A DNA stretch of 63,885 nt, counting the filler, from Olpidium bornovanus S191 (taxonomy: Eukaryota; Fungi; Olpidiomycota), in the NCBI GenBank assembly GCA_017911155.1. It is 31 parts of 31 records of this genome, joined end to end, with 100 filler letters (N's around TTAATTAATTAA, not from the genome) between each part and the next. Parts side by side here need not be neighbours in the genome. Positions count along the whole stretch, not along the records: positions 20,947 to 22,375 come from JAEFCI010008897.1; positions 22,476 to 24,983 come from JAEFCI010000758.1; positions 25,084 to 27,319 come from JAEFCI010003470.1; 28 more parts are not named here. One strand, written 5' to 3'. Shown piece after piece: positions 21,798-25,245 of the stretch; position 1 is the stretch's first letter; each line of letters begins with the position of its first letter. The notes beneath the pieces were generated by a model. It was not told where the DNA came from. It ran no database searches and saw nothing but the letters and a program-made list of their open reading frames with translations. A program made the position numbers and the translations under genes.

Positions 21798-22559
21798 CGC
21801 GGTGAGATCTAGTAGTGCGTCGCGTGCGCTGTGACGCCCGAGGTTATCTGATTGAGAACAAGCGACTGTCGACTGTGAGGTCAGGACGATCTGTCTAGTA
21901 GCCGTTCCAAACGCAAACCTCCTTCTCCCTCCCTCCCTCCCTTCCTCCCTCCCTCCCTCTCTCCCTCTCTCTCTCTCTCTCTCCCCTCCAACTCTCTCAC
22001 TTTCGTTCTCTCTCTCCCGAAAGAGCTTTGAATGAAGTCCGCGTTCCCACAACTGGCAGCGACGGCCCTCGTTATCACAGCGGCCCAGCTATCACAAACT
22101 CAACTGTGGTGGGGGTTGCCCGCACTTGGATTTCGCACACCTCTTCCTCCACTGCCGGCAGTGTCCGTTGACGCTCCGCTCCGCGAGAGAGAGAAAGGGA
22201 GGGGGTTGGGCGTGGGGGAAGGAGGGGAAGATCTAATCCTCACCGTTGCGCGCAGCTTTTGTATCCCAAACACACAACGCCCCGACAGCGCTCCACGTTC
22301 CCTTTTTTTTTTTTTTTTTTTTTTTTTTCCGGGGGTCCCCCGGGGGCCCCCGCCCCCCCCCCCCCCCCACACACCNNNNNNNNNNNNNNNNNNNNNNNNN
22401 NNNNNNNNNNNNNNNNNNNTTAATTAATTAANNNNNNNNNNNNNNNNNNNNNNNNNNNNNNNNNNNNNNNNNNNNCGAGACTCTGGAGGTGGCGTTGGAA
22501 GTCGTGGGAAAGATATTCTCCTCCTCGATCGGAGCGGATGCTCTGCAGACGACGACCTG

Positions 22560-22964
22560 TCTGGCGTTCAGCAGCGGCCTGCATGGAAGGATGGCTGTAC
22601 GACAGATGAGCTTATTGCGTTGCGGCTCAGGCAGCTAGAAAGACGGGAAGTCGACCTTGAACGGGCTAAGGAGCGACTGGAGAAAGAACGGGAAATAGCA
22701 AAGGAGATGGTGGACTCAGCCCGAACGACACGAGAACAAACTATCGAACCCGGAGAATGGGTCTTAGTGCGGAATGATCGAATGTTCAAGGAGTTTCGGA
22801 CAGAGCAAAAACTCTTGCCTTGGTGTTTTGGGCCTTATGTTGTGGATGAAGTAAACCGAGACGCTCGAACTTACGTCCTTCGTGAGCTAGATGGAACCCG
22901 GTTAAAGACTCGATATTCGGGAACTCGGATCCGGCTGTTCCGCCGTCGAACGGGTGAGATGTGA
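22560..22964 (+). CDS. Gypsy pol integrase C-terminal (GPY/F-SH3-like) region, partial
   Basis: GEWVLVRNDR..KLLPWCFGPYVVDEV..TYVLRELDGTRL..RIRLF is typical of gypsy integrase tails. Confidence 0.85.
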   Translation, partial: SGVQQRPAWKDGCTTDELIALRLRQLERREVDLERAKERLEKEREIAKEMVDSARTTREQTIEPGEWVLVRNDRMFKEFRTEQKLLPWCFGPYVVDEVNRDARTYVLRELDGTRLKTRYSGTRIRLFRRRTGEM

Positions 22965-23508
22965 ACGGAACCGACGCAACTGGAGGCAAAGCTCAGCGAA
23001 GAAGACGAGTTGGGACGTGACGGAGAAGAAACAGACCTGCGCTCAAGAATGCACGACTAATACGTAACGAGCGTATTCGAACTACGACGCCCTGATTCCT
23101 TGTCGAGGATACGTAGGCAGTCTATGATCGTTGGATACCCATCGGGAGACGCGGGACAAATAAAAAAATCGTACAGCGTGGGACGTGGAAGATTGCCGGA
23201 GGACGCACTCGGGACCGGACCATACTCGCTCATCGACCACGTTTGCTGACAGTGCTATCTGCGGCGATATGGACGGTTAGGTCGATGAGAAGGAGTGTGG
23301 CGCCTCGAGGCTCCAATCGTCAGGTTGAAGGTGAGGAAGGGATGGCGGCGGTCTCGAATGAAGGAGGCAGGGTGACCAAGTTTCAACTACCAAATGCCAA
23401 GATCAAATTCCAAAACTTGAACTTGAAATTCCACCGTATTTACGTTTGATTTTTTTTTATTGTTTCGTTTCTCTCTGGAGGGAAGGAGAAAGGGGAGTGG
23501 CGTTGCGA

Positions 23509-24372
23509 CTATGGAACGGGCGGCATGTCAGCTGCTGCTGAGCCGGGAGCCGACGCGTTGCCACTGGAGGAAGACCCGCCAGGAGCAACGGTTGCCGAGG
23601 AAGACCCGCTGGCAGATGGCGTCGCGAGCGCGGCCACCGAGGAAGGCTCGCTGGTAGCAAGGGGCACGAGGACCGAAGAGGCGGAAGTCGACGACGGAAG
23701 AGCGACTGCGGCGGTTGTCCGCGACCGCGTGCTACGATGACTGCTGGGGGCGGTGGCGGTCGCGATCCTGCGACTTGTTGTAGAGGCGGAGGTGGAGCCG
23801 GATGTTGCCAGGGCAGGCGCGTGTCTGGTCGTCGACGTAGAGGCGTGGCTGGCGCGAGCTTGCGACCGTGTGACGCGATCCGACGGGGGAGGAGCACCCT
23901 CTTCCCTGCCGCCTCCCTCAGGATTGTCGTCGTCGTCGCGCGGAACGTCCCGCCAAATGTCTGAGAAGAGAAAATTTTGTGAGCATGTTTGGCCCTGGTC
24001 GACCCGGGACATGTCGAGGAGAGGATGCTCTCGTGCGACCGCGAGCCGACGGAGAAAATTATAGGATTCAGCGCTTTGATGGGGCTCCGGGAACCAAGAG
24101 TTCCGGGCGCGGGGAGAAAGGGCTGCAGGGGCATCGTCTGCGAGCTCGGCGTCTGGCTGCGGCAGAGAGACCGGGTGCATGAGGACGCGAACCTGAGTAT
24201 AACTGTCGTCGGCGACGGGAGGGAGGCGCGGATTGTAGTCGCGATCTTCAGGGCCGCCGGGGCCACAATACTGCGTGTCTGACGGCAAGAACAGGAATTC
24301 CAGATCGCGAGGATCTTCGGGAAGCCAAAAGGAGGCTGGCCAATTCATGACCTGGAGGAAGGCGTCAATCAT
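23509..24372 (-). CDS. Unknown-family protein (copy 1), antisense within the gypsy element
   Basis: 287-aa ORF. Its first ~150 aa align by eye with 49653-50771; the C-terminus is S/A/T/P-rich. Confidence 0.75.
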   Translation of the reverse strand: MIDAFLQVMNWPASFWLPEDPRDLEFLFLPSDTQYCGPGGPEDRDYNPRLPPVADDSYTQVRVLMHPVSLPQPDAELADDAPAALSPRARNSWFPEPHQSAESYNFLRRLAVAREHPLLDMSRVDQGQTCSQNFLFSDIWRDVPRDDDDNPEGGGREEGAPPPSDRVTRSQARASHASTSTTRHAPALATSGSTSASTTSRRIATATAPSSHRSTRSRTTAAVALPSSTSASSVLVPLATSEPSSVAALATPSASGSSSATVAPGGSSSSGNASAPGSAAADMPPVP

Positions 24373-24736
24373 CGATCGGCGAAATCTGCAAGTAGACGTG
24401 GAAGAGGCTATCTATCAAAGTGGAGTTACAGGACGAAGGAGGGACCAAAACTGACTGGAGGAGGGCGCCGCAGGCTTCGGTACTTCTGTCCTCGTGGACG
24501 GCGCGAAACCTCCATGCGTAATGGATAAAGCGGATCATCCGCCAGCGCAGAGTGCATTGACGTTCTGGCGTCGGTCGATCGGCAACGCACGCAGCTGCGG
24601 CCGCGAGCGAACTCCGGGAGTCTCGCAACCGGTGCGCCCAGAAGGCCGTGTATATCCGACGGGTGGTAGCGTCGAGACGCCTCTCGGTGAAGGCGGACGA
24701 GGTGGACGCAGGGGCAGCGGACCCAGAGGACGACAT
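24365..24736 (-). CDS. Upstream antisense ORF, probably the frameshifted N-terminus of the 23509-24372 protein
   Basis: Starts MSSSGSAAPAS and overlaps the downstream ORF by 8 nt. VHED..ALLQSVLV resembles VEHDD..ALHFSLVL, which is in frame in the second copy. Confidence 0.5.
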   Translation of the reverse strand: MSSSGSAAPASTSSAFTERRLDATTRRIYTAFWAHRLRDSRSSLAAAAACVADRPTPERQCTLRWRMIRFIHYAWRFRAVHEDRSTEACGALLQSVLVPPSSCNSTLIDSLFHVYLQISPIDD

Positions 24737-25245
24737 TGTGGCTGGGTGAACGGGTGGACGCGGCGGAGAGTGAAGTGCGGAGTAATGGTGCGGGGCGAGG
24801 GGCGTTGGTGGAGCCAAATCCGACTCGTTAAAACACAAAAGAGCTATCAGTCACGTGGCGGACCGTGACTTTCGAGACAAGCTCATCAATCACGGGGGGG
24901 CGTCTGTAGTGAAGGGAAACGAAGGGTGCGAGGGGCTAACGGAGGAAACTGTGAGGAAACCAAAAACCGCGCGTTAAATTCCANNNNNNNNNNNNNNNNN
25001 NNNNNNNNNNNNNNNNNNNNNNNNNNNTTAATTAATTAANNNNNNNNNNNNNNNNNNNNNNNNNNNNNNNNNNNNNNNNNNNNCAAAGGCATAATCTGAT
25101 GGCAGATTCTGAAGTAGAGGCAGAGACCCCGGCGCAATATCCGAGAGAACGAAGCTCACCGAGGCGTAGTAAAAACATCTGACAGGGCTTATATCCAGCG
25201 CATGTTTTCCGGTTTTTTGCCGTCCGCAGAAGAGCTGACTGCCCG

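What the first reader, a model, noticed from the sequence alone, without database searches (positions are those of the whole stretch)
22476..24983. Gypsy retrotransposon carrying an unknown antisense gene between integrase and the PPT/3' LTR
Seen: pol ends at 22964 on +, and about 1.9 kb separates it from the PPT/TG at 24892-24905. That space holds intronless minus-strand ORFs (24736-24365 and 24372-23509) reading away from the 3' LTR. The larger ORF has a globular, aromatic/acidic/Pro-rich N-domain (WPASFWLPEDPRDLEFLFLPSDTQYCGPGGPEDRDY) and a disordered S/A/T tail. Knowledge: extra antisense ORFs in this position are known in some plant gypsy lineages (Retand/Grande/RIRE2), mostly of unknown function. 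Inference: an accessory protein driven by antisense promoter activity of the 3' LTR, possibly an anti-silencing or particle factor, in a fungal element family.
Basis: partly seen in the sequence, partly recalled or inferred. Interest (0 to 1): 0.75.

Follow-up and report, generated by a model that had tools for sequence, protein, structure and literature searches.

The report
Antisense two-exon gene beside gypsy integrase
A short fungal contig, closest to Olpidium bornovanus, carries the decayed tail of a gypsy-type retrotransposon integrase and, facing it, an intact two-exon gene of a small unnamed protein family; it is probably an antisense accessory gene of that element, a kind already known in plants and in Botrytis.

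Summary
They are two exons of one minus-strand gene: ATG 24736, a 70-nt GT..AG intron at 24455-24386, stop at 23509, and AATAAA about 50 nt further on.

Homologues read straight across the splice junction, and both exons are conserved. The family is tiny. A search of 1.84 billion protein representatives found 10 relatives and a word search added one more. Three are from Olpidium bornovanus and the rest from unnamed metagenome contigs. No Pfam, PDB or fold match was found.

The plus-strand ORF is the C-terminus of a Ty3/gypsy-type integrase, 86-87% identical to O. bornovanus proteins. In this copy it is damaged. It has a premature stop (relatives read on to 23060), and its homology is cut at about 22580, where a copia-like integrase fragment begins on the other strand.

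Evidence that the gene belongs to the element:
- the adjacency seen in this piece;
- a diverged integrase relative and a diverged gene relative that both come from a JGI contig of exactly 1411 nt;
- copies that show the decay typical of transposable elements.

The PPT and LTR could not be verified. Homology to the one other close copy ends about 95 nt upstream of the ATG.

Antisense genes in this position are known (Grande, RIRE2, Retand, and Boty brtn in fungi). This is a new member of a known kind, of moderate interest.

The parts
22476..22584 (-). 36-codon fragment of a retroelement integrase core (…IRSDRGGEY…, copia-like). It is cut by the piece's edge, and it is not part of the gypsy-type element.
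   Evidence: Pfam rve PF00665, E 0.0022, profile positions 56-88. No similarity to the Olpidium gypsy-type integrase P0018. The plus-frame homology to P0012 is lost here.
22578..23060 (+). C-terminal remnant of a Ty3/gypsy-type integrase (SH3-like GPY/F module, acidic tail, no chromodomain). It has an in-frame premature stop at 22962-22964, and its homology is cut on the 5' side at about 22580.
   Evidence: 86-87% identity to O. bornovanus P0012, P0014 and P0018, and 66% to JGI P0013. P0014 and P0015 read through to '…SRMHD' at 23057. The profile of these proteins hits PFV integrase (E 1.5e-6) and Ty3 Gag-Pol 7q5b (E 7e-6). Weak SH3_Tf2-1 match.
23061..23508 (.). Spacer of 448 nt (449 nt stop to stop) between the two convergent genes. 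It is lower in GC and carries AATAAA on the plus strand at 23159-23164 and AATAAA on the minus strand at 23461-23456, 48-53 nt after the antisense gene's stop.
   Evidence: Sequence reading. GC 0.455-0.48 in the 200-nt windows spanning 23276-23575, against 0.6-0.7 in the gene. No repeat or Rfam match.
23509..24385 (-). Exon 2 of the antisense gene (291 codons plus the TAG stop). It holds the conserved acidic core with FLFLPSDxQYCGPxGPxD, WFP…YN and SRVD motifs (about 150 aa), then an S/T/A-rich tail of about 140 aa carrying a TRSQAR motif.
   Evidence: Translation. Relatives P0001-P0011 and P0019 at 37-89% identity. Invariant columns. Tail conserved only in the close copy P0002.
24386..24455 (-). 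70-nt intron, phase 2: GTCAGT donor, TGTAAC branch-like site, TTGCAG acceptor. It carries stops in both exon frames.
   Evidence: Removing it puts exon 1 and exon 2 in one frame. P0019, P0008 and P0010 are contiguous across the junction. Copy P0002 lacks 44 nt of it, as inferred from its read-through translation.
24456..24736 (-). Exon 1 (ATG at 24736; 93 codons plus 2 nt). Basic (pI about 11) and predicted helical, with the motif R.R+IRF…WR+R.
   Evidence: Pairwise match to exon 1 of L001 (E 7e-5) and to the N-terminus of P0019 (E 1e-5). pI. Helices in the P0019 model at moderate confidence.
24737..24832 (-). 5' leader and proximal promoter region, shared with the P0002 copy.
   Evidence: The P0002 read-through translation matches the window up to 24827 at 77% identity. 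Nothing matches beyond that in any frame.
24833..24983 (.). Upstream region not shared with the P0002 copy.
   Evidence: Sequence reading. No homology to P0002 residues 1-117. LTR status untestable within the piece.

Best explanation
The minus strand carries one real protein-coding gene of two exons (about 385 codons; the exons were never joined in any tool). It has its own start, a 70-nt intron and a poly(A) signal, and it converges on the 3' end of a Ty3/gypsy-type integrase gene.

The most likely reading is that it is an antisense additional ORF of the 'aORF-3R' type, carried in the pol-to-3'-LTR region of a non-chromoviral gypsy-type retrotransposon family of Olpidium-like zoosporic fungi. 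Because the gene lies antisense to the element's genomic RNA, its intron is not spliced out of that RNA and so survives retrotransposition. The gene is presumably transcribed from a promoter in the 100-250 nt upstream of its ATG.

The protein has three parts:
- a basic helical N-terminus;
- a conserved acidic core rich in Pro, Gly and aromatic residues (FLFLPSDxQYCGPxGPxD);
- a disordered S/T/A-rich tail with basic TRSxxR-type motifs.

By analogy with Grande gene23 and with retroviral antisense proteins, I infer a nuclear regulatory or nucleic-acid- or chromatin-associated role for the element. That step is inference only.

The copy in this piece has an intact antisense gene, but its integrase is dead: it has a premature stop and is truncated and joined to a fragment of another element.

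Shown: gene structure, conservation, integrase identity, adjacency. Inferred: membership of the element, the promoter, the function.
For: Gene model:
- ORFs and intron.
- Exon 1 matches P0019 residues 5-61 (E 1e-5) and exon 2 matches P0019 residues 75-192 (E 1e-16), with matching spacing across the junction.
- P0008 'LLQLRRSAIEVY' and P0010 'LLEMRRRAIIAF' are contiguous where the window reads 'ALLQ|FRRSMIDAF'.
- L001 carries the same gene with two clear GT..AG introns and a TATAAA box.

Family:
- 10 relatives among 1.84e9 representatives, plus P0019, with invariant FLF-PSD-G-G-D columns.

Integrase:
-.

Linkage:
- Adjacency in this piece.
- P0013 (integrase C-terminus, 66% identity) and P0003 (gene relative, 49% identity) are both JGI proteins from a contig of exactly 1411 nt.
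- Gene and integrase show the same divergence from other Olpidium copies (87-90% against 86-87%).
- Copies decay as transposable elements do. P0002 has lost 44 nt of the intron, including the donor, and carries CpG-type changes in the conserved RR motif.
- Two subfamilies exist within Olpidium (P0002; P0009/P0019).
- Among named organisms, only O. bornovanus holds relatives.

Precedent:
- Antisense aORFs between pol and the 3' LTR in plants, and brtn in Botrytis Boty (PMC7264820, PMC8365987, PMC11963269).
Against: - No LTR, PBS or verified PPT lies in the piece.
- Homology between the window and the only other close copy (P0002) stops about 95 nt upstream of the ATG. The supposed PPT/LTR start is therefore not shared, although fast-diverging LTRs or a rearranged contig could explain that.
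- The gypsy fragment is truncated and abuts an unrelated, inverted copia-like integrase fragment. The piece may be a pile of transposon remnants or a chimeric contig from a binned metagenome assembly (PMC7865070).
- None of the annotated Olpidium integrase fragments has a locus tag next to a family member.
- L001 has a TATA-box promoter and introns at other positions, like an ordinary cellular gene.
- No evidence of function: both AlphaFold models have pLDDT of about 50.
Confidence: 0.6

Rival explanations
1. The gene is an independent, lineage-specific multicopy cellular gene (or a domesticated one) that here happens to lie next to a dead gypsy integrase remnant. It is not carried by the retroelement.
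For: The gene has its own promoter-like upstream region, an intron and a poly(A) signal. Intron positions differ between the window and L001, as in ordinary gene families. The upstream flank is not shared with the P0002 copy. The integrase is truncated and fused to another element's fragment. The gene is intact while pol is broken.
Against: Relatives of both neighbours come from a JGI contig of identical length, 1411 nt, at 49-66% identity. That is hard to explain without physical linkage kept over long divergence. Divergence from the Olpidium copies is equal for both features. A decayed copy exists (P0002). Among named organisms in the searched collections the family is found only in Olpidium.
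Confidence: 0.25
2. The gene belongs to a different mobile element (a nested or adjacent insertion, or a non-LTR carrier that uses a gypsy-like integrase), and not to the gypsy-type retrotransposon's internal region.
For: The piece already holds fragments of two different elements. Homology to P0002 has a sharp boundary near 24830, which could be an element end. GPY/F integrases also occur outside LTR retrotransposons (my own knowledge of Ginger-type transposons; not tested here).
Against: No transposase, terminal repeat or other element signature was found in the gene or its flanks. The spacer between pol and the gene shows no junction. The closest integrase relatives outside Olpidium (P0016, P0017) show the C-terminal pattern that I know from fungal gypsy polyproteins; that last point rests on my own knowledge and was not tested.
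Confidence: 0.1
3. The adjacency is an assembly artefact: a chimeric short-read contig from a non-axenic, binned metagenome joined unrelated repeats.
For: The assembly is highly fragmented, with 13,695 contigs in 29 Mb, binned by composition (PMC7865070). The head-to-head joint of two 5'-truncated integrase fragments at about 22580 looks unnatural.
Against: No break is visible between 22584 and 24830. The probable second instance on the JGI contig argues against it. The gene itself is independently supported by 11 relatives.
Confidence: 0.05

Closest known systems
brtn, the antisense gene of Boty-like Ty3/gypsy retrotransposons of Botrytis cinerea and Sclerotinia (Zhao et al. 2011, as cited in PMC7264820, PMC8365987, PMC4227169)
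   Same: A fungal Ty3/gypsy element with an extra protein-coding gene between pol and the 3' LTR, on the opposite strand, of unknown function.
   Different: A different fungal phylum (Ascomycota, against an Olpidium-like zoosporic fungus). Boty pol carries a chromodomain (PMC4227169), whereas this integrase ends in an acidic tail without one. No Botrytis or Sclerotinia protein appeared among the relatives, so there is no detectable homology; the brtn sequence itself was not on hand for a direct test.
aORF-3R of the plant Tat/Retand lineage (maize Grande gene23, rice RIRE2, Silene Retand; TRP28 domain PF04195)
   Same: An antisense ORF in the pol-to-3'-LTR region with its own promoter (Grande) and conserved across copies. 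The proposed role is nuclear or regulatory (PMC7264820, PMC11963269).
   Different: No PF04195 or any other Pfam match, even at E up to 10. The pol-to-gene region is much shorter here (about 1.8 kb against 2.9-6.6 kb). There are no tandem-repeat arrays. The host is a fungus.
Retroviral antisense proteins (HTLV-1 HBZ, HTLV-2 APH-2, HIV-1 ASP)
   Same: A protein encoded on the minus strand of the 3' part of a reverse-transcribing element. HBZ is spliced and is transcribed from the 3' LTR (as summarised in PMC7264820 and PMC11963269).
   Different: No sequence or domain similarity and no bZIP. Promoter location is unknown here. The carrier is a retrotransposon of a fungus, not an infectious retrovirus.

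Membership tests
Antisense additional ORF (aORF-3R) of Ty3/gypsy LTR retrotransposons | A coding region downstream of pol/integrase on the opposite strand | tested here: met
   The integrase C-terminus lies on the plus strand and ends at 23060. The gene lies on the minus strand at 24736-23509, convergent with it.
Antisense additional ORF (aORF-3R) of Ty3/gypsy LTR retrotransposons | The gene lies inside the element, upstream of the PPT and 3' LTR | tested here: inconclusive
   A G7 run followed by TG at 24894-24906 is the only candidate. No second LTR is available. The region beyond about 24830 is not shared with the P0002 copy.
Antisense additional ORF (aORF-3R) of Ty3/gypsy LTR retrotransposons | Present in most copies of the element family (linkage conserved) | tested here: inconclusive
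   There is one probable second instance: P0003 and P0013 both come from a JGI contig of 1411 nt. The contigs could not be fetched. No adjacent locus tags were found among the Olpidium proteins.
Antisense additional ORF (aORF-3R) of Ty3/gypsy LTR retrotransposons | The protein sequence is conserved among copies and relatives | tested here: met
   11 relatives at 37-89% identity with invariant motif columns. dN/dS was not computable, because no DNA of the close copies was available.
Ty3/gypsy (Metaviridae-type) integrase | Homology to Ty3/retroviral integrase, including the C-terminal GPY/F SH3-like module | tested here: met
   The profile of the window plus its relatives hits PFV integrase (E 1.5e-6) and Ty3 Gag-Pol 7q5b residues 1246-1424 (E 7e-6). 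'FGPYVV' is present. SH3_Tf2-1 matches are weak.
Ty3/gypsy LTR retrotransposon (whole element) | RT-RNase H-IN gene order and flanking LTRs | not testable with these tools
   The piece starts inside the integrase. No longer contig could be fetched.
Retand/Grande TRP28 antisense proteins | Transposase_28 domain (PF04195) | tested here: not met
   No Pfam hit for either exon or for seven relatives, at E up to 1-10.
brtn of Boty | Sequence similarity to brtn | not testable with these tools
   No brtn sequence was on hand, and the paper is not held. Indirectly, no Botrytis or Sclerotinia hits appeared.

The most novel reading that the evidence does not exclude
The gene defines a previously undescribed accessory-protein family (FLFLPSDxQYCGPxGPxD core). 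It would be an obligatory, intron-bearing antisense component of a non-chromoviral Ty3/gypsy lineage in Olpidium-like early-diverging fungi, kept under selection even where pol has died. That would make it a retroelement-encoded regulator, or a gene on its way to domestication.
Probability: 0.3. Interest if true: 0.55.

Novelty: new member of a known kind. Interest (0 to 1): 0.4.

Why it matters
Antisense accessory genes of LTR retrotransposons are widespread in plants, yet none has a known function. In fungi only brtn of Boty has been described. A second, unrelated fungal example, from a lineage near the base of the terrestrial fungi and with a retained intron, would show that this gene arrangement arose repeatedly. 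It would also give a compact protein (about 385 aa) with a sharply conserved motif to test for a role in retrotransposition or silencing. The claim is limited by very fragmentary sequence, so for now it is a lead rather than a result.

Tried and rejected
**Family and structure searches that found nothing**
- Pfam, NCBIfam and PDB-sequence profile searches of both exons and of relatives.
- ESM Atlas, twice.
- AlphaFold on two alignments gave mean pLDDT of 48.6 and 50.4. I ran no fold search, because matches to such models are meaningless.

**Searches for more copies and their context**
- Locus scans: the first metagenome scan was blank. The second found only L001, 1019 bp. The bacterial/archaeal genome collection and the viral contigs were blank.
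The contigs of P0002, P0003, P0013 and P0019 could therefore not be read.

**Other scans**
- Rfam, the repeat scan and the bacterial-type promoter/terminator scan gave nothing relevant.

**Readings rejected**
- The minus-strand gene as the gag of a minus-strand copia element. It has an intron and a poly(A) signal, no gag or zinc-knuckle match, and the intervening 0.9 kb encodes the gypsy integrase on the other strand.
- The plus-frame upstream of 22578 as integrase. Identity to P0012 is only about 18% there.
- The 269-aa overlapping ORF (23457-24266, minus strand) and the plus-strand ORFs inside the gene. These are GC-rich shadow frames with no homologues.

- The joined exon 1 + exon 2 protein was never built or searched.
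Full report
**What is in the piece.** The piece is window 22476-24983 (2508 nt), with 46-70% GC in 200-nt windows.
- a plus-strand ORF ending with a stop at 22962-22964;
- minus-strand ORFs at 24838-24365 (first ATG at 24736) and at 24372-23509.

The quoted peptide is present. ORF length is weak evidence in this composition, because a 269-aa ORF overlaps in another minus frame. 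I therefore relied on homologues.

**The minus-strand gene has two exons.** The two minus ORFs overlap by 8 nt in different frames. Reading the minus strand shows a 70-nt interval at 24455-24386 that starts GTCAGT, holds a TGTAAC branch-like site and ends TTGCAG. Removing it places exon 1 (24736-24456) and exon 2 (24385-23509) in one frame of 386 codons including the stop. I did not build or search the joined protein. The exons were handled apart, by reference.

Support for the splice:
- O. bornovanus protein P0019 (272 aa) matches exon 1 residues 21-78 with its residues 5-61 (E 1e-5). It matches exon 2 residues 1-115 with its residues 75-192 (E 1e-16). The spacing between the two matches is right.
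- P0008 and P0010 read LLQLRRSAIEVY and LLEMRRRAIIAF without a break where the window reads ALLQ|FRRSMIDAF.
- The metagenome locus L001 carries the same gene. It has a TATAAA box and two clear introns, 419-485 and 668-735 (GTATGG…TACAG and GTGAGT…CTCAG), and its exon 1 matches the window's exon 1 (E 7e-5). Its first intron lies about six codons upstream of the window's, and the window has no second intron.

An AATAAA lies on the minus strand at 23461-23456, 48-53 nt after the TAG stop.

**The protein family.**
- The word-based search found one relative.
- The exhaustive search of 1.84 billion representatives found ten.
- A profile word search added P0019.
- Three relatives are from Olpidium bornovanus: KAG5462423.1 (BJ554DRAFT_5244), 89% identical; KAG5462209.1 (BJ554DRAFT_5490); and BJ554DRAFT_3430. 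The rest come from unnamed Logan, ENA or JGI contigs of 0.7-3.5 kb.
- Invariant positions form the motif FLF-PSD…G..G..D, within FLFLPSDxQYCGPxGPxD..DPR..P. Further conserved elements are RR.+I.F, WFP…YN.L and SRV.G.
- The S/T/A-rich tail is conserved only in the close copy (87%). It is conserved poorly elsewhere (29-45%, low scores), while the core keeps 42-59%.
- Exon 1 is basic (pI 10.95), the core is acidic (pI 4.67), and the tail is 72% S/T/A/P/G.
- No Pfam, NCBIfam, PDB-sequence or Atlas match was found.
- AlphaFold models are of low confidence, with mean pLDDT of 48.6 and 50.4. Only the N-terminal helices reach moderate confidence. I ran no fold search for that reason.

**The plus-strand ORF.** From about 22578 it is 86-87% identical to O. 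bornovanus integrase fragments P0012, P0014 and P0018, and 66% identical to JGI protein P0013. It carries the FGPYVV (GPY/F) module. A profile of these proteins matches PFV integrase (E 1.5e-6) and Ty3 Gag-Pol 7q5b residues 1246-1424 (E 7e-6). It is therefore the C-terminus of a Ty3/gypsy-type integrase.

Three corrections apply:
- Relatives P0014 and P0015 continue 32 residues past the window's stop, to …SRMHD, which is 23057 in the window, followed by a stop at 23058-23060. The window's stop at 22962-22964 is premature, and the spacer to the antisense gene is 449 nt.
- There is no chromodomain. The protein ends in an acidic tail.
- Homology starts abruptly at 22578-22584. Left of that point the minus strand encodes a 36-codon integrase-core fragment of copia type (…IRSDRGGEY…; PF00665, E 0.0022) that is unrelated to P0018. 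Two 5'-truncated integrase fragments thus meet head to head. This is either a rearranged pile of transposon remnants or a chimeric joint.

**Is the gene part of the element?**

For:
- The adjacency in this piece shows no visible break.
- The best non-Olpidium integrase relative (P0013, 146 aa) and a non-Olpidium gene relative (P0003, 223 aa) are both JGI proteins from a contig of exactly 1411 nt. The two ORFs together take 1113 nt, so they fit on one such contig. I take this as a probable second instance of linkage at 49-66% identity.
- Gene and integrase are equally diverged from other Olpidium copies.
- Copy P0002 is decayed. Its read-through translation implies a 44-nt loss in the intron, including the donor, and CpG-type changes that turn FRRS into LHQL in a conserved motif.
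- Two subfamilies exist within Olpidium.
- Among named organisms, only Olpidium holds relatives.
- An antisense gene keeps its intron through retrotransposition, which fits the structure seen here (inference).

Against:
- No LTR or PBS lies in the piece.
- The candidate PPT (G7 run, then CGTC, then TG) is not canonical.
- P0002's 117 residues of upstream read-through match nothing in 24828-24983 in any frame. The two close copies therefore share only about 95 nt upstream of the ATG.
- No adjacent locus tags were found among the annotated Olpidium proteins.
- L001 looks like an ordinary TATA-driven, intron-bearing gene.

I put the accessory-gene reading at 0.6, an independent neighbouring gene at 0.25, another mobile element at 0.1 and an assembly artefact at 0.05.

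**Source organism.** The closest proteins are all from the O. bornovanus assembly. That assembly is a binned metagenome from non-axenic zoospores raised on cucumber roots, with 13,695 contigs in 29 Mb (PMC7865070). This fits a 2.5-kb piece. The piece is either another copy in that genome or comes from a close relative.

**Comparison with what is known.**
- Antisense additional ORFs between pol and the 3' LTR are well described in plant Ty3/gypsy lineages (Grande, RIRE2, Retand, PvRetro13). Their function is unknown; Grande gene23 is nuclear and has its own promoter (PMC7264820).
- Retand ORFs carry the TRP28 domain PF04195 (PMC11963269). That domain is absent here.
- A fungal precedent exists: brtn of Boty in Botrytis and Sclerotinia (Zhao et al. 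2011, cited in PMC7264820 and PMC8365987). Boty has a chromodomain (PMC4227169).
- The arrangement is therefore not new, even for fungi. What is new is the protein family, the host lineage and the documented intron.

**Mechanism.** The following steps are inferred, not shown. Transcription starts in the 100-250 nt upstream of 24736, a region that includes a CACGTG-centred inverted repeat at 24849-24870. The transcript is spliced and polyadenylated after 23461-23456. The product is a protein with a basic helical head, a conserved acidic core and a disordered basic S/T-rich tail. By analogy, it acts in the nucleus on the element's expression or on its silencing. An effect of the antisense RNA itself cannot be excluded, but conservation at the protein level shows that the protein matters.

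**Verdict.** This is a real, conserved two-exon gene of unknown family. It is probably the antisense accessory gene of a gypsy-type element, seen here in a broken copy. It is a new member of a known kind, of moderate interest, limited by fragmentary data.

Noticed in passing
window 22476-22584 (minus strand): A 36-codon copia-like integrase core fragment (…IRSDRGGEYLSHDF…; rve E 0.0022) abuts, head to head, the 5'-truncated gypsy-type integrase C-terminus at about 22580. It is either a genomic rearrangement among dead elements or a chimeric assembly joint.
   Followed up: partly
window 22962-22964: An in-frame premature stop in the integrase. Olpidium relatives P0014 and P0015 read on for 32 more residues, to the stop at 23058-23060.
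   Followed up: yes
P0002 (KAG5462423.1, O. bornovanus), against window 24455-24412 and 24384-24373: The annotated 541-aa 'partial' protein is a wrong-frame read-through of the 5' leader, exon 1 and an intron remnant. This copy appears to lack 44 nt of the intron, including the donor, and shows CpG-type changes in the conserved RR motif. It is a decayed copy and a mis-modelled gene.
   Followed up: partly
P0009 against P0019 (both O. bornovanus): The two paralogues are near-identical, except that P0009 lacks 21 residues (…SWRFQNAGSLDQTHSILSLRR…) that are conserved in the family. The P0009 gene model probably removed coding sequence as an intron.
   Followed up: no
window 24849-24870: An inverted repeat AGTCACG…CGTGACT containing an E-box-like CACGTG, 113-134 nt upstream of the antisense gene's ATG. 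It is a candidate promoter element and lies in the part not shared with the P0002 copy.
   Followed up: no
window exon 1 (about 24553-24503) and exon 2 (24384-24340); L001 exons 1 and 2; P0019 residues 45-62 and 74-88: The motif RR.+I.F….(W)R+ occurs twice in tandem in the N-terminal helical region of family members, once on each side of the window's intron. This suggests an internal duplication.
   Followed up: no
window 23159-23164 (plus strand): An AATAAA on the plus strand about 100 nt after the true pol stop. If it were used, it would end sense transcripts before any 3' LTR; its significance is unknown.
   Followed up: no
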